Position numbers and translations under genes: made by a program. DNA of 64,000 nucleotides from Utricularia gibba (taxonomy: Eukaryota > Plantae > Magnoliophyta), in the NCBI GenBank assembly GCA_002189035.1, contig NEEC01000002.1, positions 3,100,001-3,164,000 on the forward strand. Reading direction: 5' to 3'. Of the stretch, positions 18,779-43,811 are shown piece after piece (the first letter of the stretch is position 1; every line of letters starts with the position of its first letter). The notes beneath the pieces were generated by a model, which saw nothing but the letters and a program-made list of their open reading frames with translations, searched no databases and was not told the origin of the DNA.

Positions 18779-18882
18779 CAGATTTCTGACAGATGTCGAT
18801 CTGTCGTCTGACGTTATCCCTCGGGATCTCATTTGGCAGCCTTTTAGGAACCGATTATATCCGACCGGTTTATCCCCTATCA
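18779..18882 (-). repeat. Truncated 3' LTR of copy 1 (104 bp)
   Basis: Near-identical to the last ~105 bp of 27931-28467 (+ view ending CCCCTATCA); followed by the PPT complement. Confidence 0.9.
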
Positions 18883-19389
18883 TTCAGCCCCTCTGATTTG
18901 CCGATATTGGCCCTTTCGGGATAAATCGGGGAATCAGAATCACCACAATGCCGACTTCCAAGGTGCCGCTTTGTTTGCATGTGCCACAAACCGCTTTGTT
19001 CCGATATCTCTGCCACGCGTTGGTTCATAAACACGCCACGTTTTTTCCCGCCCATCCGGGGTACCTGAAACGTCGTGTCGCTTTGTCTCCCGACTTCTTC
19101 CATTATAAATATCCGCACCCCTTGTCATTTCTCCCCTTTGCTTTCTTCGTTCACTCACGAGATTCCAGCGCCCTTTGCACTCCGCCGTTCTTGTCGCCGT
19201 GTTATCCGCCGGAGATTACAGATTTCTCAGGTATCCGCTCCTTCTCCGTGTCTTTTTGCATCCCTACGGTAGCTTAACTCTCCTTTAGATCTTCGAGAAC
19301 TTTGATGGGTAGTTACCGCCCTCTTGAGTCTTTTTCCTTTCTGACTTCCGCCTCGTCCTAGGGTTTGGGCTTCTTTCGATTTTTCGAAA

Positions 19390-21642
19390 ATGGGTAGAAG
19401 ATCTAGTGAACTTGACATCCCATCTCTGTGCATTCGGTATTCGATTCCTGATGAATATCAGATTTCTCCTGCTCGGGATGCCGAAATCCCTTGGGGGATT
19501 GGCGAGGCCCCTCTGCCTCCATCCAGTCTTCCGATTCCATTAGCCTATTTCGAGAGCGGTTTACGCTTCCCACTCCATCCTTTAATAGTCCGCTTTCTCT
19601 CCACCTTTGCGATTCCACTTTACTGCCTCGCCCCGAATTCTATATTCTGCTTCACCACCTTCCTTTTCTATTCGGCCGGTATGGACCCGGTTATGACTCT
19701 GGTAGACTTCCTCCATCTCTTCAAGATTGCTGTGCGTAAAGCGAAGTCCCCGATGGATGGACGATCTCATTTTCGATTCCGCCGGTTTGAAGATAACCCC
19801 AACTTTGTCGTTAAAGCCCCCGATACCCATCATGATTGGTGGTCCTCTTTTTTTTGAGTAGCTCCTCCTTCGGGTTTTCGGTGGAACTTCCCAATCGATC
19901 CTTCAACTCCTTTCAGGGTTAAAATCTTCGGTGCGTATCGGTCTTCTTCCGAATCTCGCGAAGTTCTTTACGAGAGGCTCAGCCGAGGCTCAGTTCGGTA
20001 CGAATCTCGTGCCTTGATGTTCTCGGGTGCGTCGCTGAAAAAATCAGGTATTATCAGTCGCTCTCGAGACCCCCACTGGCCCGATATTATTTCTTCCGGT
20101 GGCACCGATTCGAGAAATCTTCATCTTAGCCCATCTCCATCCTTTCCTCTTGTTTCGGCCTCATCCCCGATTCCCCACCTGTTCAAACCGGGGCCCCAAG
20201 AAAAAGAAGAGGGTTAAGGCGATTGCGCATAAACCCTCAAAGAGGCAAAGAGGTAGTTGGGTTTAGCTTCCCCGAGTCTTAGAATCGGCATTATGTCTTA
20301 TTGCTTTTCCTACTTTCGTCTTCAGCTGAAGAGATGGCTCGAAGAAGCTCCCTAGAAGATTCGGTAATGGCGCAGTTCTCCGCCGAGATGCAGAGGATGT
20401 AGGAACCCGAGATGCCTTCCCCTGCACAGGTTTATCTTATTCCTGATGGCCCGCTGCTAAGGGTATTTGGTTCTAACTTTTTAACTTTCTTTCCAGGTCG
20501 ATTCGCCCTCAGCTCACTCAGATGTTGCTGGTCACCTCCCAGAGGGCCAAGTGGTTGAGGTTTTCGGGACTCGGGAACCAACTCCTTCTCCATCTGGAAA
20601 AGGAAAAGAAAGGCTCCCGCCTTCACCGATATCCGATAATGATCTGGCTCCGGACATTGGACGGATCTCGGCTGGGGCTTCTACTTCGGTCCCCCCTATG
20701 GACATAGGGGGGATTTCATCCCTCCGACCCGGGTGAGGGAGGATCCTGCCTTTCCCCCTTCTTCCTTCCCCTTAGGGCTACGAAAAGCCTTAGAAGAGGC
20801 CACTCCCAACCTTGTGGGAATTCAACCGAAGACTGTACTCAAAGGGATTTGGTAGGTATTCCCTCTTCCGTCTTCTTTTCTTCTTTTCTCTCTCAGGTAA
20901 GCAAATATATCTGATTCCTCGCTCGTTGATTTCATCATAGGCTTTGACCTTTGGATGGGGGATGGCCAAAGAGATGGGATCCCATTCTGAGGAGGTTTCT
21001 CGGCTTCAAGCTCAAATCATGGCTCAAGATGCCAAGATAAAGTCGTTAGGGGAAGAAGGGAGCGCATTGAGGTGCATACTCGGGAAGCGTACCCACCGAG
21101 AAGAGGAGTTGCAGACCCTGGTTAATGAAATGGGGAAGGCAATTGATGACGCCAACTCCGAGAAAGAAGGCTTCAAAGTGCAACTCGAGGAGACTGAGGC
21201 GGAGTTGAAACAAACCAAGGATCGCGTATCGGCCCTGGAAGCAGAGCTACACAACCAGGAGGTATCTCGCGGAAGACTTTTGGAGGATTTCGTGAACTCG
21301 GCCTGCTTTTCCGAATTATCGGATGTCTATGCTGGAGACTTAATCGGCCTCCTTCTATATCGCCAAAGACGACAATTCAGTCGGGAGTTTGGGCTTTCAA
21401 TTATGGATCCGCGATTCGACAGGATAAATCCCCTGACAAAGGATGAGAACATGCTAGACGTTATCGCAGATACGTTCCAGGCCCCGGAATTCGGGTTTGG
21501 AGCTGATCGGGAGCGGTTGATGGCGCTGATTCGGGCGAGGGTAGGGCGAGAGAATGATGCCAAATTGAGAGCAAGGATGGAACGTCATATCGGTTCCTCT
21601 ACCAATCCTCCTGTTAATCCCCGATCTCCTCCTGCACCTTAA
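19390..21642 (+). pseudogene. Spliced antisense accessory gene of copy 1 (Transposase_28-like domain, NLS, coiled coil); exons 19390-20252, 20326-20429, 20497-20855, 20941-21642
   Basis: FESGLRFPLHPLIVRFL...LAPNSIF motif; three GT-AG introns in consistent phases; heptad-rich last exon. Exon structure matches copy 2. Has nonsense codons and two 1-nt frameshifts. Confidence 0.8.
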
Positions 21643-22435
21643 TGACTTTTTTGACTTAGTGTATTTTCCCCCTGCTGTGGGGTTGCTTGAATATTTTTGA
21701 TATCCCGGTTCGGGATTTCCCTCTAATTTACACTCTTTTTTGCGCATCACTTTTGCCTTTGATGATATCATATTTCGGGGTAGCCCCCAGTCGGTTTGTT
21801 ATGTCTATTACGTACTTAGACTTGGAAGGTTCGCCTATGCTTTTGTGACCCGGGGGAGGGTGTCTCTTCGCCAACCCTTTGGTTTGGGCTTTTTGATTCC
21901 GGTTTGCCTTAGTATTTCCTCATGTGGGCTGAACCGCCGCTAGGGAAGTAGGTCGGAACCCCTCATGGTTGAGCGACCTCCCCAATCCGAAAGGGCCCTC
22001 TTCTGGCCGAATCCCATTGTTTTGAAAATGGGTGGATTTGCTTTGGGTGCTCCTGTCGTCTCGAGATTTCGACAGTAAGGTCAATACTTAAGGGCTTTTC
22101 AGGGCTTACGCGTGCGGTTTACGGGAACCGGTGCCCGAATTGTACCAGGGCTTATCCTTGCTACTGATGCCTAGGTTGATGGGCCACATATATATATCGG
22201 GGGAGACCCCGAGTTAATTTGCTGTATCCCACGGAGGACGCCGATTTAGAAGATTCGCCTGGGCTTATGTTACTTGGCCAGAGCTTTAGATCTTTGATGG
22301 TTTGCCTGGGCTTACGCGATTCGGCCAGGGCTTGTGTTTTGTTTTCCCATCTCCATTTCGGAGGAATTTATAGGTGCATGACTGTTTGGGGGAAGATAAT
22401 GCCGAATTCTGCAACAGAGATTGATATTGAGTCGG

Positions 22436-25400
22436 TTAAGCGTAGAACTTACTTAGATGCGATGCATTCCACGACCTTGGGAGTTCCACGCCATCTAATT
22501 GTTCCAGCGATATGCTCCTTTTCCGATTACCCTTGAAATCCGATAAGGGCCTTCCCAGTTGCGGTCTAATTTCCCGACGTATATTTGTGGTTGGATGCTC
22601 CGGAGCACCAAATCTCCCTCGGAGAATTCCCTTGGGGATATCGAGTTGTTGTAACTCTTCTCCGTTCTTCTCTGATAAGCCTCTAGTCGGCTATAGATGC
22701 TTCGTTGCTTCTCTTCCAACAGCTCCAATTCCAGTTTTCGGAGTTCAGTATTCTCTTCTTCGTTATAATGCTCTACCCGGTAGCTCTTCAAGGTCAGTTC
22801 GATAGGGCATATGGCTTCTGAACCGTAAACCAATAAGAATGGGGACTCTTCCGTGGTGGTTCGAGGGTAGTGCGATATGACCACAGTACCTCATCTTAGC
22901 GATCTGCCCACGACCCCCCAAAATCTTCGAGCTTAGTCTTCATACCTAGTCGGAGCGTTCGGTTCGTTACCTCTGTGAGGCCATTGCTCTGCGGGTGATA
23001 TACCGATGTGAAGTTGTGCTTGACCGAATACTTATCCAGGAATGCATCCATTTTTCCTCCGGCGAATTGAGTTCCGTTATCAGTCACTAGTTCTTGAGGG
23101 ATTCCGAACCGGATGAAGATGTTTTTCCACAGAAATCGGATAACGGTCTCCTCTGAGATCTTTGCCACGGCCTCAGCCTCTACCCACTTAGAAAAATACT
23201 CGACACCCACGATGACGAATTTCCTTTGACCCGAGGTGTGGGGTAAAGGCCCCATTATATCCACCCCCCATCGGTCGAAGGGGCAGGAGAGTGGAGAGAG
23301 GTTAGTTTGCTTACTGGTTTTCTCGGTATACTTGCATGGTATTGGCACACTTTGCACTTCTTCACTATATTGGTAATATCCTGCTTCATAGTTGGCCAGT
23401 AGTACCCGGTTCTTAGAACTTTCCGGCATAAGGATCGTATTCCAATATGGCTGCCGCATTCCCCCTCATGTAGATCGGTTATGAGTTCTTGAGAATGCTT
23501 TGCCCCGATGCACCTCAATAAGGGTCCATCTAAGGATTTGCGATAGAGAATTCCATTCACTAACGTATACCTCTTCACTCTAGTCTCTAACTGTCGGGCA
23601 TTCGGCTTATCAGATGAGGTTTTCCCATTTTGTAAATACCGGATGTAGGGCATCGTCCAGTCATCAAGGGGACTCAGTTGTGGAGAGATATCGTTTCCCG
23701 GTTGCTGTGTGATATGATTCACGGCTCGTAGGATCACCGAAGGTTGGTCCCGCAACCGAATTGTCACACTTCCTTCCCTTAACTCGTGAAACCCTGCTGC
23801 GAATCGGGTGAGGCTATCTGCGGACCCATTTTTTTCACGTGCTACGTGCGACAGGGTGAACTCCTTGAAGGTTTTAGCCAAGTCCTTCACCTGGACACGA
23901 TACAGAGCCATGAGGGAGTCATGAGTTTCGTATTCTCCCGAAAACTGCCCTTGCAAAAGTCGCGAATCGGTGTAAACGTCGAGTTCTGCCACTCCCAGCT
24001 CCTTGGCAATTTTCATTCCCTCAATCAGGGCTTCATATTCGGCCACATTGTTGGAGGCAGGGAATAAGAATTTCACCGTAATATAAATATGCTCTCCTTC
24101 TCGGGTCTTAATGTCTATTCCTCCTCCGGCGCCATTGTATGTTGAGCCATCCACATGCATAGCCCATCGGTCGTTGGCTTCCATGAAACGGTCTATAGGC
24201 CTGGTCATTTCGACCACAAAATCAGCAAGAGGTTGGGCCTTGATTGCTGTTCTCGACTTAAACTCAATATCCATTGTACTTAATTCAACTGCCCATTTGG
24301 CAACCCTTCCGGAAATCTCTGGACGAGACAGGATGTTCTTTAGAGGCTGATTGGTGAATACCACAATGTGCGGATCTTAGAAATATGACCTCAATTTGGT
24401 GGCTGCCATCTTCAGAGCCAAGATGAATTTCTCTGTCACCATATAGTGGGTTTCGGCCGGTAACAAAACTTTGCTTACATAATACACCGGCAAGTGATTA
24501 TTTTCCGAGATGGTTGTCAAGACTGCGCTGACTGCGACGGGCGATATAGACAGATATAGTCCTAAGGGCTCCCCTACTTTCGGAGCCACAAGAAGCGGGG
24601 GTGATGAGAGGTATTCCTTGAGTTTCTCAAAAGCAATCTGGCAATCCTCGTTCCATTCTAAAGCGCTTCCTTTTCGCAAGACCTTGAAGAAGGATGCCGA
24701 CTTATCGGCTGACCGAGATATGAAACGGCTGAGGGCAGCCAATTTACCCGTGAGGCTCTGGTATTCCTTGATTGTCCTCGGGGGTTGCATTTCGCATATT
24801 GCCTTAATCTTCTCGGAGTCAGCCTCGATTCCTCTCTCCGATACGTAATACCCAAGGAATTTTCCACTTTGCACCCCGAAACAACATTTCAATGGGTTGA
24901 GCTTTAACCCGTATGACCGACATAAAGAGAAACACGAATCCAAATACGCTAAATGTTCTTCTTCATTCATAGATTTTACGATCATATCGCCCACATACAC
25001 CTCCATTGAGGTATCGATTTCAGAAGAGAATATTTTATTTACCAACCTCTGGTAAGTCGCCCAGCATTCTTCAATCCGAAAGGCATTGCCACGTAGCAGT
25101 AAACTCCATCCTTAGTTTTCGGTTGGTCTTTCTCGGCACGAAAATTTGATGATACCCTGAATAGGCATCCATGGTGCTCAGAAATCGGGATCCGGCAATG
25201 GCGTCCACTAGCTTGTCGATCTTTGGCAAAGGATAAGGGTCCCTTTCGCAGCAGGCGTTAAGGTCGGTGAAGTCAATGCACATCCTCCATTTTCCCCCGG
25301 GCTTCGGGACGACGACCAGGTTGGCTACCCATTCGGAGTACTGGATCTCCTTCACATAACCAGCTTCCAAGAGCTCTCTTGTTTTTTCTTTGATAATTCG

Positions 25401-27852
25401 GCACTTTTCCTCTGAGAAATGTCGTTGCTTCTACCAAATCAGTTTTGCCCCCAGGTAGGTATCAATGTGATGTTCGGCGACGGATCGATCGATGCCTACA
25501 AAATCCGCAGCAGTCCAGGCAAAAATATCGGTGTTCTTCATCAAAAGTTCAACTAACCTTTTCTCGAATCTAGCGTCTAGATTGGCACCGATGCGGGTGG
25601 CTTTCTGCGCATCTTCTGGTATTAGTTGCACCGACTTGTACCCTATTGGTTCTATTGCTTGTCTAGGGGGTTCCTTTTCTACCATCATTACTCTCGACTT
25701 TTTCGCGCAGGGGTCCCGACAAGAAGATACATAACAGGACCGGGCGGTGGTTTGGTCGATACCCATCGTGCAAATGCCCTTCGATGTTGGGAATTTGATT
25801 TTCAAATGCACAGTGGAGGGTAACATACCGAATTGGTTGATGCCACGTCGCCCGAGGATGATGTTGTACGAGATCTCTGAATCTAGGATTAAGAATTCCA
25901 ACCTTTCGGTTCGGCTCCGCCCTGCCGCTTCGAATGTTACGGGCAGGGTTATTTTCCTGATAGTTTGCATGGCCCGCTGGTCGAATGCGTACAACTCCAT
26001 GCGCACATGGCGAATATTTCCCTCGTTAGATGACGCCAGTAACTCGGCCACTTCCTTCTTCATGATGTTGCACGAGGATCCTTGATCGATAAGAATCCTC
26101 CTTACCTTGGTGCTCCCACATATTCCTGACACCACAAGGGGCTCATCTCTCGCGGCTGGGCCAACCGGGACGTCTCTGCTGGAGAAGCTGATCTCTTCCT
26201 TTTCCCAAGCAGCTTTCTCAGTCGGATCATTTCCGATTTCGAAAACTTCTCCTCTTCTGACTTCATTCAAATATCTCTTCCATTCCTTTCCGAACACATC
26301 CATCTCGGTTCCTCCGGATATCATATGGATTTCCTTAATATAGGGGGGACTACCCTGCATTTGATGGGCACTCCGTGAACTTTCCGATATGTCTTGTCCT
26401 TCTCCAAGATTCGGTTCCCTGTTGGTTCGCGAGTTCGCCATCCCTGGTTTTGGAGGGAATTTCGGATATTGGTTCTCCTCGTTCCCCGTTCGCTCGTTAC
26501 GTCCTCTTTTCCGGTCCGTCATTGATGCGGGGTTCCGCATCGCGTTGTTCATCCCTCAACCAGCATGATACTGCTCGATCATCCTCTTCATCAGTCGGCA
26601 GTGGGCAGTATCATGCCCGGTGGTCTTGTGTATTTTGCAATAGGCATCTGTTCTGGTTGGTTCCACCTGATATACTTCACGGCGCTTATTCGGCCTGGGT
26701 CCCCGGTTAAGTTGGGTCTCCTGCTGTGGGACTGGATGAATCTCCACGCGGCTTTTCATCTCGGCCCTGAGGTCGTCGTCCACTCGGATGTACTTCATGA
26801 TTTTCCTTAGCAATTCTCCGAGATTCTTTGGTGGGGACTTCGATAGACTCTGTCCCAATTTCGACGTTCCTAAGGCCCGCTTCATTATTTCCACCCTTTC
26901 TTTCAAATCCAATTGGACATCCTGCGCCAAGCAGTTGAATCGATCGATGAATCTTCGCAAGCTCTCTTTTTGGTGGTCGTACCGAATAGAGTATAGTGAT
27001 GCCTTCGAAGGTGGAGCTTCAATGTTAACAACGTATCGGGTAGTGAAGAGCAGTATTAATTCCCGATAAGATGCCACGCTGCATGGTTCCAACTGTTTAA
27101 ACCAAGTCTTCGCTCCTTTCTGGAGCGAGCAAGCAAACAGCTTACACTTCATGGCCTCTGAATGTCGAACTGTGGACATCCTCATATCGAAGTCGGTTAC
27201 ATGCGATATGGGGTCCCCTTTTCCGTCATACGTGGGTAATCCGTCCGGGACCCTGAATCCTCTCTCGGGCTCTTCTCCGACTAAATCGTCCGAGAAAGAA
27301 TCAAAACGCAGCGTTGTGGTTCCAGCTGCTCCCTCAACTCCACTCTTCAAGGCCAAAGCAATATCGGCCAAAACATCTCCTCTTCCAATGGATACGTTCT
27401 GATCGAAAACGTCCCTGAAGCCTCTATCCTCTCTTCTTCCTACCAACGTCCGCTTGTCGATAAACCTTTTCCTTTCGCGGATCTGGTCTAACTCTCTTTT
27501 CAACTCTTCTTCTCTTTCTTCCAAGATTTTGCTAGTCATGTTCTCCCTATCAGTTCCTGGCTCATAACGACTTGGTTGCGCCTCTTTCTCCGCTGCATTT
27601 CCTCCTCGGTTTCGGATTCAGTCTCCATATCTGGGGGTACTCCGGAATAAGAGGTTGCTTCCTCGTTCGTGGTGCGGTTTCAGGTGTTCTCTCATGGGTG
27701 TTGGAGTTGAGACCTGAAGGTGCCCGGAGGTCGGTAAGGATTTCCGTTAGCAGGGCCTTCAGTTGGTCCCTGCTAGTGATCATAAGGCCGGGGTCTCGAG
27801 CGTCGGCACTTCCGTCATGAGCCGGGTCGGTGGCTGTGCTATTTTCCGCCAT
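22436..27852 (-). pseudogene. gag-pol polyprotein of copy 1 (frameshifts and stops)
   Basis: Gag (KCKLFACSLQKGAKTWF; YCKIHKTTGHDTAHC), protease (ILIDQGSS), RT (WRMCIDFTDLN; YVGDM), RH remnant, archaeal-type RNase H (WAMHVDGS...NNVAEYEAL), integrase HHCC/DDE (GVDIMGP, TDNGTQF) and GPY motif. Confidence 0.92.
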
Positions 27853-27908
27853 GACTCGTGATTAGCGAGTGGCTCCTGTGGGTTTCTCAAATGGGACTGT
27901 GGAACATA

Positions 27909-27926
27909 GCCCCACGGTGGGCGCCA
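27909..27926 (-). other. Primer-binding site of copy 1
   Basis: Minus strand TGGCGCCCACCGTGGGGC lies 4 nt from the 5' LTR. It is complementary to the 3' 18 nt of plant tRNA-Lys(CUU) as I recall that sequence. Confidence 0.85.
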
Positions 27927-27930
27927 AATA

Positions 27931-28467
27931 TGTTGTGGGTGAAATCGGTGTCCGGTGGGAGGCCGGTTTCAGGTAATAGGCGCGGTCGGGAATGTCGCAC
28001 CTAGTCACGTTCTTCACGGTTGGTGCGATTAGAATAAGGGTGAGCAAGGATTTTTTACGTGGAAACCGCCGGAGAGCGGAAAAACCACGGAGCTGCCGGA
28101 GCTCGCCGGAAAAGAGTTTCACTAGATGGAGGTCGCGAAATGGAGAATACAACTTGAAGAAATCTTTTGTTTTTTTTGAGTCCAACCCGGATTTCATCAT
28201 AATTCCTCCTATTTATAGGAGAGCTCACTCTGACCGAATTCTGGTGTCTGCAAATATCGGTTGCTTTCTGCTCCTGCTATACAATCTCGCTTTTCAGATA
28301 TCGGCCACCTGTCATGCCGTAATTCGGCCGCTTTTCAAACTACGTCATATGGCCATACTTGTCAGATTTCTGACAGATGTCGATCTGTCGTCTGGCGTTA
28401 TCCCCTTGGGATCTCATTTGGCAGCCTTTTAGGAACCGATTATATCCGACCGGTTTATCCCCTATCA
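27931..28467 (-). repeat. 5' LTR of copy 1 (537 bp)
   Basis: TG...CA termini; CCTATAAATAG TATA-like box on the minus strand near 28205-28218; adjacent PBS. Confidence 0.9.
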
Positions 28468-33531: not shown

Positions 33532-33827
33532 ATACAAGTTTTTTGAATCCTCTGGCGCTCGTCATAATTCCTTCTATTTATAGGAGATCTGACCGAACCC
33601 TGACATCTGCAAATACCGGCTGCTTTCTGCAACTGCTATACGATCTCGCTTTTCAGATATCGGCCGCCTGTTATGCCATAATTCGGCCGCTTTCCAAACT
33701 GTGTCATATGGCCCTGCCTATCAGATTTCTGACAGATATCGGTCTATCGACTGGCATTATCCCCTCAGAGTCCCCTTTTGGCAGCCTTTTAGGAACCGGT
33801 TACCCTTGACCGATTTACCCCCTACCA
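33532..33827 (-). repeat. Truncated 3' LTR of copy 2 (296 bp)
   Basis: Matches the distal part of 43812-44305; homology starts abruptly at ATACAAGTTTTTTGAATCC. Confidence 0.9.
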
Positions 33828-34336
33828 TTCAGCCCCTCTGATTTGCCGATATTGGCCCTTCCAGGGTAAGTCGGGGAATCAGAATCACTATAATGCCAAC
33901 TTTTGAGATACCGCCTTCCATGCATGAGCCATAAACCGCTTTGTACCGATATCTCCGCCACGCGTCGGTTCGTAAATATGCCACGTTTTTTCCTGCCCAT
34001 CCGGATACCTCAAACGTCGCGTCGCTTCGTCTCCTTAGTCCTTCCATTATAAATATCCGCTCCCCTTGTCATCTCTCCTCTTTGCATTCTTCGTTCGCTT
34101 TCGAGATTCTAGCGCTCTCTGAACTCCGCCGTGCTTGCCACCGTGTTATCCGCCGGAGATTACAGATTTTCCAGGTATCCACTCCTTCTCTGTAACTTTT
34201 TGCATCCCTACGGTTGCTTAATTCCCTTTTAGGTCTTTAGGAATTTTTCACGGGTAGCTATCGCCTTTCTGAGTCGTTTACCCTCTCTAACTTCTGCCTT
34301 GTTCTAGGGTTTGGAGCTTCTTTCGATTTTTCGAAA

Positions 34337-36569
34337 ATGGGTAGGAGATCTAGTGAACTTAATATCCCCTCTCTTCGCATTCGGTACTCGATCCCTACTG
34401 AGTATCAACTTTCTCCTACAAGGGATGCCGAAATCCCTTGGGGGATAGGCGAGGACCCCTTGCCTCCATTCAGTCTTCTGGTTCCGCTTGCCTATTTCAA
34501 GAGTGGTTTACGCTTCCCACTCCATTCTTTAATAGTCCGTTTTCTCTACACCTTTGCGATTCCGCTTTATTGCCTCGCCCCGAATTCCATATTCTGCTTC
34601 ACTACCTTCCTCTTCTATTCGGCCGGTATGGATCCGGTTATGACTCTGGTGGATTTCCTCCATCTCTTCAAGGTTGCCGTACGTAAAGCGAAGTCACCGA
34701 TGGATGGTCAATCCCATTTTCAATTCTGCCGATTTGAAGATAACCCCAACTTTGTTGTTAAAGCCCCCATACCCACCATGATTGGTGGTCTTCTTTCGTT
34801 TGAATAGCTCCCCCTTTGGGTTTTCGGTGGAACTTCCCAGTCGATCCCCCAACTCCTTTCAGGATCAAAATCTTTGGTGCGTATCGGTCTTCTTCCGAAT
34901 CTCGTGAAGCCCTTTACGAGAGGCTTAGTCGAGGCTCAGTTCAGTATGAGTCTCGTGCCTTGATGTTCTTGGGTGAGTCGCTGAAAAGATCTGGTATTAT
35001 CGGTCGTTCTCGGGACCCCCATTGGCCCGATATCATTCCTTTCGACGGCACCGATTCGAGAAACCTTCCTCTTAGCCCCTGTCCATCCTTACCTCTTGTT
35101 TCGGCTTCACCCCGATCCCCCACCTGTTCAAACCGGGGCCCCAAGAAAAAGAAGAGGGTTAAAGCAGTTGCGCACAAACCCTCAAAGAGGCAAAGAGGTA
35201 GTCGGGTTCAGCTTTCCCGAGTTTCAGAATCGGCGCTAAGCCTTATTGCTTTTCCTACTTTCGTTTTCAGTTGAAGAGATGGCTCGAAGAAACTCCCTGG
35301 AAGATTCGGTGATGGCACGGTTCTCTACCGAGATGTAGAGGATGCAGGAACCCGAGGAGCCCTCCCTTGCACCAGTCTGTCTCCTATTTAACAGTTACCG
35401 CGAATTCCCAATTATAACCTTTTTTCGGTTTTTCTTTTAGGCTGATATGATTGGAGCTCAGCTGGATGCCGCCGATCCTTCCTTGGGGGAAGATCAAGTA
35501 GTAGAAGTCTCCGAGATCCGGGAGTTGACTCCCCGTCCTTCAGCCTGGAAAGGGAAAGAGAAACTTCCTCCATCACCCGATCTCAGCGATACTCCCATTC
35601 CTGATGCAAGATTCTTTTCGGCTGGTGCTTCAACATCGGCTCCCCCAATCGGGTTATAGAGGGATTCTGCCCTCACAGAAGTAAGGGACAACCCGGTGCT
35701 TCCTCTATCCTCAGTTCCAGCTGAACTAAGGAGAATCCTGGAGGAGCTATGTCTAATACCTCGGATGTTCGGCCGGAAACGGTACTTGAAGGGATCTGGC
35801 AGGTACGTATCCCGTTTCCTTCTCTAAATTCTAAGTAGTCGGTGCTTGACTTGGATTATTCTTTCAGGCTTTGACTCTTGGGTGGGGAATGGTTAGAGAG
35901 ATTGGTTCTCAATCGGAGGCAGTCTCTCGGCTTCAAGCCTAGGTTGTGGCTTAGAATGCCCAGATAAAGTTGTTGGAGGAGGAGGGGAGTTCGCTGAAGA
36001 CCGTTTTAGGGAAACGCACCCGCTAGGAGGATGAATTGCGGAATGTGATCGAGGAAATGGGAAAGGCGGTTGACGATGCTAAATCGGAGAGGGAGGGCTT
36101 CAAAGTCCGATTTGAGGAGGCAGAAGCGGAGTTAGAGCATGCCAGGGGCCGCATTTCAGCACTGGAGGCCGAATTACTTGATCGAATTGCATCTCGGCAG
36201 GGACTTCTGGATGACTTTGTCAACTCTTCCTGTTTTGCCGAACTCTCCGATATCTATGCAGGAGACTTATTCGGCTTACTTCTATACCGTCAGAGACGAT
36301 AGTTCTGTCGGGAATTTGGGCTTTCAATCATGGATCCGCGCTTCGACAGGATAAACCCCTTGACGAAGGATGAGAACATGCTTGATGTTATCGCAGATAC
36401 TTTCCAGGCCTTGGAGTATGGGTTCGAAGCTGATAGGGAGCGGCTGATCGCGCTGATTCGGGCGAGGATAGGGAGAGAGAATGACGCCAAGTTGAGAGCC
36501 AGGATGGAGCGACATACCGGTTCCTCTGCCAATCCTCCCATTAATCCCCCATCTCCTCCTGCACTTTAG
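34337..36569 (+). pseudogene. Spliced antisense accessory gene of copy 2; exons 34337-35197, 35271-35374, 35441-35802, 35868-36569
   Basis: Homologous to 19390-21642; NLS-like PKKKKRVK; KGKEK motif; several TAG stops at codons that are CAG/CAA (Gln) in copy 1. Confidence 0.8.
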
Positions 36570-37348
36570 TGACCTTTTTAACTTGGTGTATTTTCCCCTT
36601 GCTGTGGGGCTTCTTGAACATTTTTGATATCCCGGTTCGGGATCTCCTTCTAATTTACTCCATTTTTTGCGCATCAATTTTGCCTTTGATGATATGTCTA
36701 TTACGTGCCTAGACTTGGGAGGTTCGCCTATGCTTTTGTGATCTGAGGGTGGGCGTCTCTTCGTCAACCCTTTGGTTGGGTTTTTTGATTTTAGTTTTCC
36801 TTGGTATTTCCTTATGCGAGCTGAACCGCTGCTAGGGAAGTAGGTCGGAACCCCTCATGGGTTGAGCGACTTCCCCAATCCGTAAGGGCCCTCTTCTGGC
36901 CACGCCCCATTGTTTTGAACATGGGGGGATTCGCTTCGGGTGCTCTTGCCGCCTCGAGATTTCGACAATAAGGTCAATACGTAAGGGCTTTTCGGGGCTT
37001 ACGCGTGCGTTTCATATAAACCGGTGCTTGAATTGTACCAGGGCTTATTCTTGTTATTGACGCTTGGGTTTTTGGGGATCACACATATATATATCGGGGA
37101 AACCCCGAGTTGATTTGCTGTATCCCGTAGGGGATGCCGATTTTGGAGATTCGCCTAGGCTTATGTTACTTGGCCAAAGCTTGTGATTTAGATCTCTGAG
37201 GGTCTGCCTAGACTTACGTGACTCAGCCAGGGCTTACGGTTTCGTTTACCCATCTCCACTTTGGAGGAATTTATAGGCCCGTTGGTGTTTTGAAGAAGAG
37301 AATACCGAATTTTGCGCAATCCCGTGATGGAGATTGACATTGGGCTAG

Positions 37349-40300
37349 CTAGGTGTAGAATTTTCTTAGGTGTGATGCATTCCATGACCTTGGGAATTCC
37401 ACGCCATCTAATTGTTCCAGACGATACGCTCCTTTCCCGATTACCCTTGAAATCCGATAAGGGCCTTCCCACTTGCGATTTAATTTCCCAACATGTCTCT
37501 GTGGTTGAATGCTTCGAAGCACCAAATCTCCATTAGAGAATTCCCTTGGGGCTACCGACTTGTTATATCTCTTCTTCGTTCTTCTCTGATGAGCCCCTAG
37601 TCGGCTATAGATACTTTGTCGTTTCTCTTCCAACAGCTCCAACTCCAGTTTTTGTAGGTCAGCGTTTTCTTCTTCATTATAATGTTCCACCCGGTAGCTT
37701 TTCAAGGTTAGTTCAATAGGGCATACGGCTTCTGAACCGTAAACCAATAAGAACAGGGATTCTTCCGTGGTGGTCTGAGAGGTGGTGTGATATGACCACA
37801 GCACTTCATCTAAGCGATCTTCCCATGACCCTCCAAAATCTTCAAGCTTAGTCTTCATTCCTAGCCTGAGCGTTCGATTCGTTACCTCTGTGAGACTATT
37901 GCTCTGCGGGTGATACACCGAGGTGAAGTTGTGCTTGACCGTATATTTATTTAGGAATGCCTCCATTCTTCCTCCAGTGAATTGGGTTCCATTATCGGTC
38001 ACTAGTTCTTGAGGGATTCCGAACCGGATGAAGATATTTCTCCACAAAAATCGAATAACGGTTTCCTCTAATATTTTTTCCACGGCTTCAGCCTCCACCC
38101 ATTTGGAGAAATACTCGACTCCCACGATGACAAATTTCCTTTGGCCCGCGGTTTGGGGGAACGGCCCCATAATATCCACTCCCCATCGATCAAACGGGCA
38201 TGAGAGTGGAAGAGAGGTCAGGCTATTTACCGGCTTTTTCGATGTACTCGCATGGTATTGGCATACTTTGCATTTCTTCACCATTTCGGTAATATCCCGC
38301 TCCATAGTTGGCCAATAATACCCGGTTCTCAAAGCTTTCCTGCATAAGGATCGTATACCGACGTGGCTGTCACATTCCCCTTCATGCAGATCGGTTATAA
38401 GTTCTTGAGAATGCTTTGCCCCGATACACCTCAAGAGGGGTCCATCTAAGGATCTACGATAAAGAATTCCATTTACCAGTGTATATCTCTTTGCTCTAAT
38501 CTCTATCTGTCGGGCTTTGGATTTATCAGATGGTGTTTCTCCATTTCGTAGATACTGGACGTAGGGTGATGTCCAATCATCAAGATGACTCAGCTGTGGA
38601 GAGATATCATTTCCTGGTTGCTGGGTAATATAATTCACGGCTCGAAAGGTCACTGAAGGTTGATCCTTGCACAAGTCGTGAATCGGTGTAGACATCGAGC
38701 TCCGCCACTCCTAGTTCCTTGGCAATTTTCATTCCTTCAATCAAGGCTTCATACTCAGCCATATTGTTGGAGGCCGGGAATAAGAATTTCATCATGATAT
38801 AAATGTGTTCCCCGTCCTGGGTTCGGATGTCTATTCCTCCTCCAGCGCCGTTGTACGTCGAGCCATCAACGTGCATGGCCCATCGGTCATTGGCTTCTTC
38901 AAAATGGTCTATAGGCCTGGTCATTCCGACCACAAAATCGGCAAGAGGTTGGGCCTTGATTGCTGTTCTCGATTTAAACTCAATATCCATTGTACTCAAT
39001 TCGACCGCCCATTTGGCAACTTTTCTGGAAATCTCTGGTCGAGATAGGATATTCTTCAGAGGCTGATTGGTGAATACCACGATATGCCGATCTTGGAAAT
39101 ATGACCTCAGTTTTGTGGCCGCCATCTTCAGGGCCAAGATAAATTTTTCTGTCATCGAATACTGGGTTTCAGCCGGTAACAGAACCTTGCTCACATAATA
39201 CACCGGAAGGTGTTTATCTGCCGAGATGGTTGTCAAGACTGCGCTGACTGCAACGGGTGATATAGACAGATACAGTCCTAAGGGCTCTCCTGCTTTCGGA
39301 GCCACAAGAAGCAGGGGTGATGAGAGATACTCCTTGAGTTTTTCAAAGGCAATCTGGCAATCCTCGTTCCATTCTAAAGAATTTCCCTTTCGCAAGACCC
39401 TGAAGAATGATGCTGACTTTTCGGCTGACCGAGATATGAAACGACTGAGAGCAGCCAATTTAACCGTGAGACTCTAGTATTCCTTGATCGTCCTGGTGGT
39501 TGCATTTCGCATATTGCCTTAATCTTCTCAGGGTCAACCTCGATTCCTCTCTCTAATATGTAATGCCCCAGGAATTTTCCACTTCGCACCCCGAAGCAAC
39601 ATTTCAGTGGGTTGAGTTTTAATCCGTATGACCGACACAAAGAGAAACAAGAATCCAAATACGCTAAGTGGTCTTCTTCATTCATAGATTTCACGATTTT
39701 TTTATCGTCTACATATACCTCCATCGAGGTACCGATTTCAAAAGAGAATATTTTATTTACCAACCCTTGATAAGTCACCCCAGCATTCTTTAAACCGAAA
39801 GGCATGGCCACGTAACAGTAAACCCCATCCTTGGTGTAGAAGGTGGTTTTTGGTTGGTCTCTCTCGGCAACAAAAATTTGGTGGTATCCCGAATAGGCAT
39901 CCATGGTGCTCAGGAATCGAGATTTGGCAATGGCGTCTACTAGCTTGTCAATCTTTGGCAAAGGATAGGGGTCCCTTTCGCAGCAGGCGTTGAGGTCGGT
40001 GAAGTCAATGCACATCCTCCATTTTCCCCCGGGCTTCGGGACGATGACTGGTGATAACATATATTTTTGAGTGACTCAATGCATGGAATTTACTCATGTT
40101 GTGCTACAAAAATTATGCTTTATTGCCTAGTTTTATATTTTTGCACATAAGTACCATAGTAGTGTCAATTTAGTCTTAGTTGGGACTAAATCGCGATTTA
40201 GTCCCAATCTTCTAATAGTTTTATTTGAGTAATGCAGTGCAGGTCGCAACACAAATCCCAAGGAACCGAATATGCACAGTGTAGTGGTAGAAGATGAGTT

Positions 40301-43300
40301 CAAAAGTCTACAAATTGATACAGACAAAATCCAAGGAGGGAAAAAGGGAGATTTTGGACAAAATGAGGGAAAGTTGGAGAGAGAAGGCAGATCTCCTCTT
40401 GGAGACTCACGAACAAGTTTTTGGAGATTTTTCTGGAGAAAGAGGAAGGAGGGGACGACGAACCAGAAGAACACAGCTTCTTTTGAGAAATTATCTTCGT
40501 TCTTCATGTTTACTGTTCCTGTGTGAACGAAGTATTTGTCCTACTTTTGCTTCATATTGCTCGTTGTTATTTAGCATTTGTAGTCAAGATGTTGCTTAAT
40601 ATCTGCTATGAAGATGTTTTACTTTCCATTACCATGAGTAGCTAAGCACTTAGAGGGGGGTGACTTGGGGTGAAGAGGGGAGAAATATGCTAATCCATCC
40701 TTAAACCTAGTAAATCATAAGTCACACTACTTCCTTAGCAAACCAGAATATATCCAGGAGGGGGAGGTAGTGGAACCCAACTAACAACCCTAATTAGAGG
40801 TAGACCAAAGATTAGGGGGAAAAACAAGAATCCGGGTAGACCTAGATCTTGTGAGTTAGTTGTATGATTTTTGATTTATGTGAGCTTGTTTAGTGATAGG
40901 TATACATCCTTTAGGAGTCCCAAGGCATCACTCATTCCATCCCAGAAACTACCAAAGCCCAAAACTTGTTACTTTTCCTTACTGCATTCCATCGTAGTTC
41001 TGTTTTATTCCTAGCTAAGACCAATTTTACCAACATGACACTGATTACATGCATTAACACTCACATAGCAAGCACCTGCTCTTCGTGTTCGACCCTAATC
41101 ACTATGCTCATAATTGTTTTATGCTTGAAGGTGTATTAGGTTATAAATTTATTTGATAGGAAATTTTGCATTTACGACGTGTGAATTTTTCGTTTATCAA
41201 GTGGGTTGGATACCCACTCGGAATATTGGATCTCCTTCACATAACCGGCTTCCAAGAGTTCCCCTGTTTTTTCTTTGATAATAAATGCCGTTGCTTCTGC
41301 CGAACTGGTTTTGCCCCTGGATAGGTATCAATGTGATGCTCGACAACGGATCGATCAATGCCTAAAAAGTCTGCAGCAGTCCAAGCAAAAATATCGGCGT
41401 TCTTCATCAAAAGTTCAACTAACCTCTTCTCAAATTCGGTGTCCAGATTGGCACCAATGCGGGTTGCTTTCTGCGCCTCTTCTGGTACTAGTTGCACCAA
41501 CTTGTACCCTATTGGTTCCATTGCTTGTCTAGAGGGTTCTCGGGGTTCCTTTTCTACCATCATCACTCTCGGCTTTTTTGCGCAGGGGTCTCGGTAGGGA
41601 GATACATAACAGGACCGAGCGGCTGGTTGGTCGATGTCCATCGTGCAACCCCTCGATGTCAGGAATTTAATTTTCAAATGCACAGTGGAGGGTATCATAC
41701 CGAATTGGTTGATGCCGGGTCGCCCAAGGATGATGTTGTATGATACCTCTAAATCTAGGATTAAGAATTCCAACCTCTCGGTTCGGTTCTGCCCTGCCGC
41801 CCCGAATGTTACAGGCAGGGTTATTTTCCCGATAGTCTGCACGGCCCGCTGATCGAAGGCGTATAACTCCATGCGCACGTGGTGGATGTTTCCCTCGTTG
41901 GATGATGCCAGTAACTCGGCTACTTCCTTCTTCATGATGTTGCAGGAGGATCCTTGATCAATAAGAATCCTTCTTACCTTGGTGCTCCCGCATATTCCTG
42001 ATACCACCAAAGGTTCATCTCTTGCGGCTGGGGCGACTGGGACGTCTTTGCCGGAGAAGCTGATCTCTTCTTTTTCCCAAGCAGTTTTCTCAGTCAGACC
42101 ATTTCCGATCTCGAAGACTTCTCCTCTTCTGGCTTCATCCAAATATCTCTTCCGCGCTTTTCCGGATACATCCATTTCGGTCCCTCCGGATATCACATGG
42201 ATTTCCCGAATGTAGGGGGGACTGCCTTGCATTGGGTGTGAATTCCGAGAATTTTCCGGTATGTCTTGTCCTCCTCCGAGATTCGGTTCCCTGTTGGCTT
42301 TCGGGTCTTCCCTCAATGGTTTTGGGGGAACTTTGGATATCGGTTACCTTCATTCCCGGTTCGTTCGTTACGTCCTCTTTTTCGGTCCGTCATCGATGCA
42401 GGGTTTCGTATCGCGTTGCTCATTCCCCCGCCAGCATGATATTGCTCGATCATCCTCTTCATTACTCGGCAGTTGGCAATATCATGCCCGCTGGTCTTGT
42501 GTATTTCGCAGTAGGCATCTGTTCTGGTTGGTTCCACCTGATATATTTCACGGCGCTTGTTCGACCTGGGCCCCCGGTTATGTCGGGTCTCTTGCTGCGG
42601 GCTCGGATGGATCTCCACGCGGCTTTTCATCTCGGCCCTGAGGTCGTCATCAACTCGGATGTACTTTATGATTTTCCTTAGCAATTCTCCGAGATTCTTT
42701 GGCGGGGACTTTGATAGACTCTGTCCCAATTTCAATGTTCCTAAGGCCCGTTTCATTATTTTCACCCTCTCCTTTAAATCCAGCTGGACGTCTTTCGCTT
42801 GGCAGTTAAATCGATCGATGAACCTTTGAATAGAGTATAAACTCTCTTTTCGGTGGTGATACCGAACAGAGTATAATGCTGCCTTTGAAGGTGGAGCTTC
42901 GATGCTGACAGCGTATCGGGTAGTGAAAAGCAGCACTAACTCTCGATAAGATGCCACGCTGCATGGTTCTAACTGTTTGAACCAAGTCTTTGCTCCTTTC
43001 TGGAGCGAGCAAGCGAATAGCTTACACTTCATGGCCTCTGAATGTCGAACCGTGGACATCCTCATATCGAAGTCGGTTACGTGTGATATAGGATCCCCTT
43101 TTCCGTCGTACGTGAGTAATCCGTCTGGGACCCTGAATCCTCTCTCGGGTTCTTCTTCGACTAAATCGTCCGAGAAGGGGTCAAAACGCAGCGTTGTGGT
43201 CCCAGCTACTCCCTCAACCCCACTCTTCAAGGCCAAGGCGATGTCGGCCAGAACATCCCTCTCCCGGTGAATACGTTCTGATCGAAAACGTCCCTGAAGC

Positions 43301-43733: not shown

Positions 43734-43789
43734 GATTCGTGATTAACGAGTGGCTCCTATGGGTTTCTCAAGTGGGGCTGTAGAACGTG

Positions 43790-43807: not shown

Positions 43808-43811
43808 AATA

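What the first reader, a model, noticed from the sequence alone, without database searches (positions are those of the whole stretch)
19390..21642. LTR retrotransposon carries a four-exon spliced antisense gene conserved in two diverged copies
Seen: the short plus-strand ORFs between INT and the 3' LTR join into one reading frame of about 675 aa through three GT-AG introns. Copy 1 introns: 20253-20325, 20430-20496, 20856-20940. Copy 2 introns: 35198-35270, 35375-35440, 35803-35867. Phases are identical (1, 0, 0). Exons 2 and 4 have identical lengths in both copies (104 and 702 nt); exon 1 is 863/861 nt with opposite 1-nt indels. Introns 2 and 3 barely align apart from their splice signals, while the flanking exons stay homologous as protein. 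Architecture: Transposase_28-like domain (GLRFPLHP..LAPNS), NLS-like PKKKKRVK..KRQR, disordered KGKE linker, long coiled coil. Established: Retand/Grande-type elements are known to carry antisense extra ORFs of unknown function, generally described as separate ORFs. Inference: these may be exons of one spliced nuclear protein. Antisense orientation shields the introns from removal in the genomic RNA. The role may be anti-silencing or chromatin targeting.
Basis: partly seen in the sequence, partly recalled or inferred. Interest (0 to 1): 0.85.

Follow-up and report, generated by a model that had tools for sequence, protein, structure and literature searches.

The report
Spliced antisense gene in Retand retrotransposon
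Two dead copies of a plant Retand-type jumping gene carry that lineage's known helper gene on the opposite strand, and comparison with relatives shows the gene is split by three genuine-looking introns, where the papers I could read describe only separate open reading frames.

Summary
However, neither copy gives one open frame: each has at least five lesions, including an in-frame TGA shared by both.

The gene is the known antisense Tr28 (Transposase_28) plus coiled-coil accessory gene of Retand/TatVI Ty3/gypsy elements.

The split-gene reading holds up by comparison:
- A much more diverged third copy (L005) keeps the splice dinucleotides. Its exon 3 is open, 336 nt long and in phase 0/0.
- The only three T-rich, GC-poor islands bounded by conserved GT..AG are the three proposed introns.
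- Differences between the copies pile up at third codon positions (p = 1e-15), and dN/dS is 0.09-0.27.
- In a distant Retand family (integrase about 43% identical), three copies keep frame over 2.3 kb only once 83-nt and 70-nt GT-AG introns are removed.
- Sesamum and Primulina elements also have a phase-0 intron just before the coiled-coil exon.

No RNA evidence was obtained: no RNA run holding the stretch was listed, and the contigs laid on it showed no joints.

No paper I could read mentions introns in this gene, but three key subscription papers were not available.

First-stage readers noted the same gene many times elsewhere in this genome; those notes are unchecked.

Verdict: a real feature, a new variant of a known kind. 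Its function is untested.

The parts
18779..28467 (-). Copy 1 of the Retand/TatVI-type element. Its 3' LTR is truncated on the left and gag-pol is broken into several ORFs.
   Evidence: Direct repeats and copy-to-copy alignment. Pfam finds gag, RVT_1, RT_RNaseH, RVT_3 and integrase on minus-strand ORFs.
18779..18882 (-). Remnant of copy 1's 3' LTR: only about 105 nt align with its 5' LTR, at 97% identity.
28155..28467 (-). Copy 1's 5' LTR (about 310 nt; boundaries approximate).
19104..19111 (+). TATAAATA, a candidate TATA box of the antisense gene, 279 nt before the ATG. It lies inside the element between the 3' LTR and the ATG, in a 17-nt block identical in both copies.
   Evidence: The promoter function is inferred and was not tested.
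19390..20252 (+). Copy 1 exon 1 (863 nt): Tr28 domain, then an NLS-like basic cluster. It ends in phase 1. Broken by an in-frame TGA at 19855 and a 1-nt frameshift near 20165.
   Evidence: dN/dS is 0.13 before the TGA and 0.27 after it.
20253..20325 (+). Copy 1 intron 1 (73 nt, GT..AG; T 0.42, GC 0.42).
20326..20429 (+). Copy 1 exon 2 (104 nt), with an in-frame TAG at 20400.
20430..20496 (+). Copy 1 intron 2 (67 nt, GT..AG; T 0.45, GC 0.39).
20497..20855 (+). Copy 1 exon 3 (359 nt): Ser/Pro-rich linker with a GKGKE motif. The frame changes near 20733 (TGA at 20734) and the last codon is a TAG at 20853.
20856..20940 (+). Copy 1 intron 3 (85 nt, GT..AG; T 0.45, GC 0.39).
20941..21642 (+). Copy 1 exon 4 (702 nt, 233 codons, open): coiled coil plus a conserved C-terminal helical region.
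   Evidence: dN/dS is 0.14.
33532..44308 (-). Copy 2 of the element (about 10.8 kb). LTRs are at 33532-33828 and 44027-44308 and are about 88% identical, so this is an old insertion. The domain order is gag, RT, gRNH, aRNH, INT.
34048..34055 (+). The same TATAAATA upstream of copy 2's gene.
34337..35197 (+). Copy 2 exon 1 (861 nt): a 1-nt frameshift near 34769 and the shared in-frame TGA at 34801.
35198..35270 (+). Copy 2 intron 1 (73 nt, GT..AG).
35271..35374 (+). Copy 2 exon 2 (104 nt), with a TAG at 35336.
35375..35440 (+). Copy 2 intron 2 (66 nt, GT..AG).
35441..35802 (+). Copy 2 exon 3 (362 nt), with a TAG at 35657 and a frame change near 35745.
35803..35867 (+). Copy 2 intron 3 (65 nt, GT..AG).
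35868..36569 (+). Copy 2 exon 4 (702 nt), with four in-frame TAGs at 35940, 35952, 36024 and 36300.

Best explanation
**What it is.** The stretch is the accessory gene of a Retand (TatVI) Ty3/gypsy LTR retrotransposon. It lies between integrase and the 3' LTR, on the strand opposite gag-pol.

**Structure.** At family level it is an ordinary Pol II gene:
- a candidate TATA box 279 nt upstream of the ATG, inside the element;
- four coding exons;
- three short (63-85 nt), U-rich GT-AG introns in phases 1, 0, 0;
- a product of about 675 residues: an N-terminal Tr28 (Transposase_28) domain, a basic NLS-like cluster, a fast-evolving Ser/Pro-rich linker, a coiled coil and a conserved C-terminal helical region.

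**How the introns persist.** On the element's genomic RNA the introns read as CT..AC, so they cannot be spliced out of the RNA that is reverse-transcribed. Every new copy therefore inherits them. Only the antisense mRNA is spliced.

**State of these copies.** Both copies in this window are dead, in gag-pol as well as in this gene.

**Shown here:** the architecture, conservation of the splice sites, coding constraint confined to the exons, and recurrence of a split gene in distant Retand families.

**Inferred, not shown:** actual splicing and transcription from the internal promoter, nuclear import, oligomerisation through the coiled coil, and nucleic-acid or chromatin binding by Tr28.

**Guess at the role (low confidence, about 0.3).** A nuclear, self-associating factor acting in trans for the element, regulating its transcription or silencing or guiding integration.
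For: **Within this family**
- GT..AG is present at all six intron ends in both copies.
- The diverged relative L005 keeps donor 1 at the same position and phase, and keeps introns 2 and 3 (67 and 71 nt). Its exon 3 of 336 nt is fully open in phase 0/0, against 3-9 stops in the other five frames.
- L001 keeps intron 3.
- In all three sequences, introns have GC 0.34-0.47 and T 0.38-0.45, while exons have GC 0.46-0.56 and T 0.18-0.30.
- The only GT..AG intervals that are conserved and intron-like in composition are the three proposed introns.
- Intron lengths differ by amounts that are not multiples of three (73/73/63, 67/66/67, 85/65/71). Exons 2 and 4 keep their length or change by a multiple of three (104/104/101, 702/702).

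**Selection**
- Differences by codon position are 69/49/154, p = 1e-15.
- NG86 dN/dS is 0.09-0.27 in the model frame, against 0.3-2.3 in the wrong frames.
- In exon 3, pN/pS is 0.39-0.66 with synonymous sites saturated.

**Distant Retand family (L004, L009, L010, L011; integrase 42-44% identical)**
- The 83-nt phase-1 and 70-nt phase-0 GT-AG introns are conserved, apart from one private donor change in L011.
- Every indel in exons 2 and 3 is a multiple of three, as are those of exon 1 apart from a 65-nt gap at L011's truncated start.
- With the introns removed, L004, L009 and L010 (2280-2397 nt) stay in frame to the final stop, with only 4, 1 and 1 premature stops. Unspliced, they show 11-16 stops. 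L011, which is truncated at its 5' end, does not stay in frame.

**Other hosts**
- Sesamum (L003, 64 nt) and Primulina (L008, 59 nt) each have a phase-0 GT-AG intron directly before the coiled-coil exon.
- The deposited 407-aa Sesamum gene model is reproduced only when that intron is included.

**Identity of the gene**
- Tr28 matches in 4 of 5 aligned homologues, best E = 6.8e-10.
- aRNH lies between gRNH and INT.
- The literature describes antisense Tr28 and Tr28-coiled-coil eORFs in Retand/TatVI.
Against: - There is no RNA evidence. No RNA run holding the stretch was listed. Contigs of four runs guessed to be RNA showed no joints and only short or diverged matches.
- Neither window copy has an open spliced frame.
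- Both copies share an in-frame TGA at 19855/34801, inside the conserved region after the Tr28 core, which I cannot explain. It could be a parallel transition at a methylated cytosine or an ancestral stop.
- In L005 the position matching acceptor 1 lacks AG. An AG 8 nt downstream must be used, which gives a 101-nt exon 2.
- Only three lineages of this exact family were available (two window copies and L005, plus partial L001).
- The introns in Sesamum and Primulina rest on single sequences.
- NG86 overestimates dS when transitions dominate, so the true dN/dS is somewhat higher than stated.
Confidence: 0.8

Rival explanations
1. The plus-strand ORFs are separate, unspliced additional ORFs, as in published ORF-based surveys. 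The short gaps between them would be plain spacers, and each ORF would be translated, or not, on its own.
For: - Retand surveys list several antisense ORFs per element and do not mention introns (104 antisense ORFs in 63 clusters).
- No spliced RNA was seen here.
Against: - The spacers carry conserved GT..AG ends, are U-rich, and have lengths that are not multiples of three. The flanking coding pieces change length only in threes.
- Exons 2 and 3 lack a start codon at their beginning and sit in frames that connect only once the spacers are removed.
- In L009 and L010 a frame of about 2.3 kb runs to the end, each with a single premature stop, only if 83 and 70 nt are taken out.
Confidence: 0.07
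2. The introns are real, but they are relics of a host or DNA-transposon gene captured as genomic DNA. In the retrotransposon the gene is no longer expressed or needed, so the structure is a fossil and not a working part of the element.
For: - Both window copies and most relatives carry stops.
- Unchecked notes from this scan report Tr28 genes in hAT, MULE and Harbinger elements and a stand-alone copy in the same genome.
Against: - Purifying selection is visible on the divergence between element copies and lineages.
- Indels in threes persist across copies of the L004 family that differ by 13-24%.
- The premature stops I could compare across copies of the L004 family are private to single copies, as expected from decay after insertion.
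- The gene is reported in 97% of recently active Retand clusters.
Confidence: 0.08
3. The four-exon model is over-fitted. With enough GT and AG dinucleotides and free use of frameshifts, decayed DNA can always be stitched into a long frame.
For: - The model needs at least five lesions in each window copy.
- There are 130 conserved GT..AG intervals of suitable length to choose from.
Against: - It shows the same boundaries with an open, in-phase exon 3.
- Composition picks out exactly the same three intervals.
- Third-position excess and low dN/dS hold in the model frames only.
- An independent family reproduces a split gene without any frameshift.
Confidence: 0.03

Closest known systems
Antisense Tr28 / Tr28-coiled-coil extra ORF of Retand (TatVI) Ty3/gypsy elements (Kejnovsky 2006; Steinbauerova 2011; Ustyantsev 2015, PMC4408406; Vicient 2025, PMC11963269)
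   Same: - Same position, between pol and the 3' LTR.
- Same antisense strand.
- Same N-terminal Transposase_28 domain and C-terminal coiled coil.
- Same element lineage, with aRNH between gRNH and INT.
- A POL-3'LTR region of about 3.5 kb, within the published 2.9-6.6 kb.
   Different: - The papers I could read describe one or several uninterrupted ORFs and never mention introns.
- Here the gene is split into four coding exons. A distant family has three.
- This family has no tandem-repeat array.
- Its Tr28 match falls just below Pfam's cut-off.
Maize Grande gene23 (Gomez-Orte et al. 2013, as cited in PMC7264820)
   Same: It is an antisense accessory gene in the long 3' internal region of a related element. 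It is transcribed from its own promoter and its product is nuclear. Here a conserved TATAAATA lies inside the element upstream of the ATG, and the protein has an NLS-like cluster.
   Different: I could not read the primary paper, so I do not know whether splicing was examined. No sequence comparison with gene23 was made here.
HTLV-1 HBZ and other retroviral antisense genes
   Same: It is a protein-coding gene on the minus strand of a retroelement, near the 3' LTR, expressed from an antisense promoter and, for the main HBZ isoform, spliced. This rests on my own knowledge and on the review cited. The logic matches: antisense introns are invisible on the genomic RNA.
   Different: There is no sequence or domain relationship. 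HBZ's first exon lies in the 3' LTR, whereas here the candidate promoter and all coding exons are internal. This is an analogy of mechanism only.
Ogre (TatIV) intron between gag-pro and pol (Steinbauerova 2008, cited in PMC6317226)
   Same: It is a spliceosomal intron carried by a plant Tat-lineage LTR retrotransposon.
   Different: The Ogre intron is in sense orientation and is removed from only part of the genomic transcripts. The introns here are antisense and need no such balance.

Membership tests
Retand / TatVI lineage of plant Ty3/gypsy elements | An extra RNase H (aRNH, Pfam RVT_3) lies between the gypsy RNase H and integrase. | tested here: met
   In ORF 38607-39455(-), RT_RNaseH covers residues 57-154 and RVT_3 covers 202-262, followed by INT ORF 37349-38695. 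In copy 1, RVT_3 comes before Integrase_H2C2 in ORF 23255-24364.
Retand / TatVI lineage of plant Ty3/gypsy elements | [quoted passage not shown] | tested here: met
   In copy 2 the region from the end of INT (37349) to the inner LTR edge (33828) is about 3.5 kb, and the gene lies on the opposite strand.
Retand / TatVI lineage of plant Ty3/gypsy elements | Placement of RT/RH/INT in the Retand clade by phylogeny (REXdb). | not tested
   No reference set was on hand. The nearest integrases are only 43-46% identical, and those checked carry RVT_3.
Retand / TatVI lineage of plant Ty3/gypsy elements | No chromodomain (non-chromovirus). | tested here: met
   The INT ORF hits rve, Integrase_H2C2 and a weak SH3_Tf2-1, with no chromo domain.
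Tr28-coiled-coil accessory protein | An N-terminal Transposase_28 (PF04195) domain. | tested here: inconclusive
   The window proteins score 24.2 and 21.7 bits against a cut-off of 26.2. They align with L004, L003 and L008 homologues through the GLRFPLHP..LAPN core, and 4 of 5 aligned members hit PF04195, best E = 6.8e-10. They are homologous, but below Pfam's own threshold.
Tr28-coiled-coil accessory protein | A C-terminal coiled coil. | tested here: met
   The AF2 model of exon 4 has helices at 2-47, 52-118 and 121-150, with pLDDT above 90 over about residues 60-100. Pfam and PDB give only weak coiled-coil hits.
Tr28-coiled-coil accessory protein | Nuclear localisation. | not testable with these tools
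   There is only an SV40-like basic cluster, PKKKKRVK..KRQR, in a 45-nt block identical in both copies.
U2-type spliceosomal introns of plants | GT..AG termini conserved among diverged copies. | tested here: met
   - Window copies: 6 of 6 intron ends.
- L005: 5 of 6, with acceptor 1 displaced by 8 nt.
- L001: intron 3 retained.
- L004 family: 15 of 16 ends.

U2-type spliceosomal introns of plants | Short and U-rich relative to the exons. | tested here: met
   Introns are 63-85 nt, with T 0.38-0.45 against 0.18-0.30 in exons. They are the only three such islands bounded by conserved GT..AG.
U2-type spliceosomal introns of plants | Removing them yields one continuous reading frame. | tested here: inconclusive
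   - Not met in the two window copies as they stand.
- Met for exons 2-3-4 of L005, apart from two stops.
- Met for L004, L009 and L010 of the distant family, in frame to the end with 4, 1 and 1 premature stops.
U2-type spliceosomal introns of plants | Spliced RNA is observed. | tested here: inconclusive
   No RNA run holding the stretch was listed. Contigs of four runs showed no joints and little coverage.

The most novel reading that the evidence does not exclude
The split structure may be an old, lineage-wide property of the Retand Tr28-coiled-coil gene. A phase-0 intron directly before the coiled-coil exon is seen in this family, in a family from another genome whose integrase is about 43% identical, and in Sesamum and Primulina elements.

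If that holds:
- The 'several antisense ORFs' of Retand, Grande and RIRE2-type elements would be exons of one Pol II gene.
- The SMC, Mis12 and topoisomerase-like hits reported for some of those ORFs would be the linker and coiled-coil exons.
- The gene would have been acquired as intron-containing DNA and kept intact through countless rounds of reverse transcription only because it lies antisense.
Probability: 0.6. Interest if true: 0.7.

Novelty: new variant of a known kind. Interest (0 to 1): 0.6.

Why it matters
- **Annotation.** It would change how one of the most abundant plant retrotransposon lineages is annotated. ORF-only surveys detect Tr28 in 23% (PMC6317226) to 97% (PMC11963269) of Retand elements, depending on the ORF length cut-off, and they list the other exons as unrelated ORFs.
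- **Biology.** It is a natural case of an LTR retrotransposon stably carrying an intron-containing gene. It shows that antisense placement is the condition that allows this.
- **Origin.** The introns bear on where the gene came from: capture as DNA, or from another transposon, and not by retro-transduction of a spliced mRNA.
- **Assay.** Exon-junction primers or reads would separate the accessory mRNA from genomic RNA and from DNA contamination. That makes expression of this enigmatic gene directly measurable.

Tried and rejected
**Protein database searches**
- The exhaustive HMMER search with exon 4 found only a 94-aa fragment of the same family, a 56-aa relative and a TE-contaminated TRM13 gene model.
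- Word-indexed searches with exon 4 and with the Tr28 part found nothing within the allowed length range.
- Exact look-ups showed that the window's ORFs are not in the protein collection.

**More copies of the family**
- A metagenome scan with a protein alignment and one with a 26-nt conserved DNA word both found nothing.
- Only L001 and L005 could be added.

**RNA**
- No RNA run holding the stretch was listed.
- Contigs of X1, X2, X3 and X5 laid at 80% likeness gave no joints.
- One 311-nt contig matches only 20939-20971, starting at the intron 3 / exon 4 boundary. It does not continue into exon 4, so I draw nothing from it.

**Structure and solved structures**
- The Tr28 model was unusable (mean pLDDT 40), so no fold search was run.
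- PDB sequence searches gave nothing for Tr28 and only chance-level coiled-coil hits for exon 4.

**Ideas considered and dropped**
- A further small intron that would remove the shared TGA: there is no suitable GT..AG, and it would delete the conserved GFRWNFP motif.
- Programmed read-through of the TGA: the sequence context does not resemble the known plant-virus read-through contexts (from memory, not tested).
- Homology of intron 1 here with intron A of the L004 family: both are phase 1, but they lie on different sides of the NLS region. I leave this open.

**Literature**
- Steinbauerova 2011, Gomez-Orte 2013 and Kejnovsky 2006 are not held. An earlier mention of introns there cannot be excluded.
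Full report
**1. What is at the coordinates**

The window holds two copies of one LTR retrotransposon on the minus strand. Copy 1 spans about 18779-28467 and copy 2 spans 33532-44308. They are 81-92% identical over most of their length.

Pfam on the minus-strand ORFs gives the order gag, RVT_1, RT_RNaseH, RVT_3 (the extra 'archaeal-type' RNase H), Integrase_H2C2, rve. An aRNH between gRNH and INT is the arrangement described for angiosperm Ogre and Retand elements (PMC6317226).

The LTRs are only about 300 nt long:
- Copy 2's pair is about 88% identical, so it is an old insertion.
- Copy 1's 3' LTR is truncated to about 105 nt, which are 97% identical to its 5' LTR.

Gag-pol is broken into several ORFs in both copies.

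The finding lies between integrase and the 3' LTR on the plus strand, so it is antisense to gag-pol.

**2. The observation**

All six intron ends are GT..AG. Exons 2 and 4 are 104 and 702 nt in both copies, and exon 1 is 863/861 nt.

The exons do not, however, form one open frame in either copy. Each copy has at least five lesions.

| Copy | Lesions |
|---|---|
| Copy 1 | in-frame TGA at 19855; 1-nt frameshift near 20165; TAG at 20400; frame change near 20733 (TGA at 20734); TAG at 20853; exon 4 intact |
| Copy 2 | 1-nt frameshift near 34769; the same TGA at 34801; TAG at 35336; TAG at 35657; frame change near 35745; four TAGs in exon 4 |

Exon 3 is 359 and 362 nt, so the stated phases (1,0,0) cannot be read from these two copies alone.

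Nearly all the stops are TAG or TGA. Substitutions between the copies are mostly transitions (for example 76 to 19 in exon 1). This is what cytosine-methylation decay of a plant transposon produces.

**3. Is the intron model more than clever stitching?**

Four independent lines say yes.

(a) *A third lineage.* The only database relatives of exon 4 were two Logan contigs from one run.
- L001 is 94% identical to copy 1 and internally deleted. It retains intron 3 with its GT..AG.
- L005 is far more diverged: 39-40% amino-acid identity in exon 3 and about 50% in exon 4. It is collinear with the genomic structure.
- In L005, donor 1 is a GT at exactly the same position and phase.
- Intron 2 is 67 nt (GTTAGT..TTTTCAG) and intron 3 is 71 nt (GTATTG..CCTCCAG).
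- Exon 3 between them is 336 nt, a multiple of three. It is open in the model frame, while the other five frames hold 3-9 stops.
- One blemish: the position matching acceptor 1 is not AG in L005. An AG 8 nt downstream gives a 101-nt exon 2, three nt shorter than 104, which is open up to its last codon.

(b) *Composition.* In all three sequences the introns have GC 0.34-0.47 and T 0.38-0.45. The exons have GC 0.46-0.56 and T 0.18-0.30. Of 130 GT..AG intervals of 55-120 nt conserved between the two window copies, the 16 with intron-like composition all fall on the three proposed introns.

(c) *Length changes.* Intron lengths vary freely (73/73/63, 67/66/67, 85/65/71). Exons 2 and 4 keep their length or change by three.

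(d) *Selection.*
- Differences between copies 1 and 2 fall 69/49/154 on codon positions 1/2/3 (p = 1e-15). The piece after the shared TGA shows it too: 6/10/20, p = 0.013.
- NG86 dN/dS in the model frame is 0.13 (Tr28 part), 0.27 (after the TGA), 0.19 (NLS part), 0.27 (exon 2) and 0.14 (exon 4). The same stretches read in the wrong frames give 0.3-2.3.
- In exon 3, synonymous sites are saturated (pS 0.59-0.74) while pN is 0.29-0.42.
- NG86 inflates dS when transitions dominate. The wrong-frame controls and the codon-position counts are therefore the safer statements.

**4. The same kind of gene in distant elements**

The integrase finds relatives of at most 43-46% identity. Those checked carry RVT_3. 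I fetched DNA around several of them.

*One ENA genome assembly (L004, L009, L010, L011).* The antisense region after INT holds a Tr28 ORF followed by two or three further ORFs and, in L004, a tandem-repeat array. Aligning the four copies gave the following:
- An 83-nt intron (GTGAGT..AG, phase 1) follows the Tr28 region.
- A 70-nt intron (GTAAG/GTATG..CAG, phase 0) sits directly before the coiled-coil exon.
- 15 of 16 splice dinucleotides are conserved.
- On average the introns are more diverged than the exons.
- Exon lengths are 751/751/745, then 710/752/842/713, then 819/819/810/819.
- Every indel in exons 2 and 3 is a multiple of three (3, 3, 9, 30, 57, 57, 57, 72, 72).
- With the two introns removed, L004, L009 and L010 (2280, 2322 and 2397 nt) stay in frame to the terminal stop, with 4, 1 and 1 premature stops. 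The stops I compared lie at positions where the other copies have a sense codon.
- Without splicing, the same three copies show 11-16 stops.
- L011 is truncated at its 5' end and does not stay in frame.

*Sesamum indicum (L003).* A 64-nt GTATTT..GTTTAG intron in phase 0 lies directly before the coiled-coil exon. The deposited 407-aa gene model at that place can be reproduced only with this intron plus a second one of 85 nt. That model is a prediction and not RNA evidence.

*Primulina tabacum (L008).* A 59-nt GTAAGT..TTTTCAG intron in phase 0 holds the same place.

In all four families the exon after this intron begins with a similar short motif (window ALTFGWGMAKE, L005 GFTLGWSLLKE, L004 AATHLKGLAEK, Sesamum ASNFVRGLSLK). 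The C-terminal regions also align. I read this as one old intron position, although exact homology of the position is not proven.

**5. What the gene is**

The exon 1 N-terminus matches Pfam Transposase_28 just below the cut-off (24.2 against 26.2 bits). It aligns with the L004, L003 and L008 proteins through the GLRFPLHP..LAPN core, and 4 of 5 aligned members hit PF04195.

Exon 4 is predicted as long helices, with pLDDT above 90 over roughly residues 60-100.

The literature places this squarely:
- TatVI (= Retand) elements carry an antisense eORF with 'a Tr28 domain fused with CC' (PMC4408406).
- The product of Grande's gene23 is nuclear, and the gene is transcribed from its own promoter (cited in PMC7264820).

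The one-protein architecture is therefore known. None of the five papers I could search for the words 'intron' or 'splic' applies them to this gene. Full-text searches for Retand or transposase 28 together with splicing terms found nothing else. Three subscription papers could not be read.

**6. How it most likely works**

A TATAAATA in a 17-nt block identical in both copies lies 279 nt upstream of the ATG, inside the element and about 220 nt from the inner edge of the 3' LTR. This fits an internal antisense promoter like that reported for Grande.

On the genomic (minus-strand) RNA the introns read CT..AC and cannot be spliced. The RNA that is reverse-transcribed therefore keeps them, and every daughter copy inherits an intron-containing gene. 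Only the plus-strand mRNA is spliced.

The product would be a protein of about 675 residues:
- a Tr28 domain (function unknown; predicted to bind DNA in PMC11963269);
- a basic cluster PKKKKRVK..KRQR;
- a fast-evolving Ser/Pro-rich linker;
- a coiled coil that probably mediates self-association.

Everything from transcription onwards is inference. I obtained no RNA evidence.

**7. Things that do not fit neatly**

- Both copies share the TGA at 19855/34801, in the conserved stretch after the Tr28 core. Downstream sequence still shows coding constraint. That argues for two parallel hits at a hypermutable site, or spread by recombination, more than for an old truncation. I cannot decide between these.
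- A sharply bounded block from the end of exon 2 to the middle of exon 4 (about 20374-21357) is only 59-70% identical between the copies, against 81-92% elsewhere. Its synonymous sites are saturated, yet dN/dS is 0.09 in its exon 4 part. This looks like recombination between deeply diverged subfamilies that exchange the linker and coiled-coil module, and not like local decay.

**8. Verdict**

It needs three corrections:
- Both copies are dead.
- The Tr28 plus coiled-coil single protein is already published.
- The proposed function is untested.

The intron-exon structure, and its recurrence across distant Retand families, appears not to be described in the literature I could reach.

First-stage readers of this scan noted the same spliced antisense gene at many other places in this genome, and Tr28 genes in DNA transposons. 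Those notes are unchecked, and I used them only as leads.

Broken frames were read piece by piece.

Noticed in passing
window 20374-21357: This sharply bounded block, from the end of exon 2 to mid exon 4, is 59-70% identical between the two copies, against 81-92% everywhere else in the 10-kb element. Synonymous sites are saturated, but dN/dS is about 0.09. It looks like a module swapped by recombination between old subfamilies.
   Followed up: partly
window 19855-19857 and 34801-34803: The same in-frame TGA occurs in both copies, right after the Tr28 core (..WWSSF(F/V)*), while the sequence downstream still shows coding constraint. It may be a parallel mutation, spread by recombination, or an ancestral stop. 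This is unresolved.
   Followed up: partly
window 19231-19288 and 34175-34232: A candidate 58-nt GT..AG interval lies in the presumed 5' UTR, downstream of the conserved TATAAATA (19104 / 34048). The whole region is 92% identical between the copies, so conservation says little.
   Followed up: partly
window 21128-21176, as seen in runs X2 and X3: Contigs of 1.2-1.4 kb at depth about 22 in two runs guessed to be RNA share only a 49-nt stretch of exon 4, with 9 mismatches. This may be an expressed, diverged relative of the coiled-coil part elsewhere in the genome.
   Followed up: no
window about 25316, against copy 2 about 40050-41180: Copy 2 has about 1.1 kb between the gag/protease part and RT that copy 1 lacks. 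Its one ORF (40133-40507, minus strand) has no Pfam hit. It could be an insertion in copy 2 or a deletion in copy 1.
   Followed up: partly
window 4715-6394 (-), 14393-15727 (-), 59093-59827 (-): Host genes flank the elements: an intronless DELLA/GRAS protein (559 aa), a family-17 glycosyl hydrolase with an X8 domain (444 aa), and an exon of a Tho2 homologue.
   Followed up: no
L004 13000-15500: The distant Retand element has a long tandem-repeat array between the antisense gene and integrase, as described for about half of recently active Retand elements. The window's family has none.
   Followed up: partly
L011, donor of the second intron: This copy has AT instead of GT at the donor that is conserved in its three relatives. 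It is also truncated at the start of the gene. This is an example of a splice site decaying in a dead copy.
   Followed up: no
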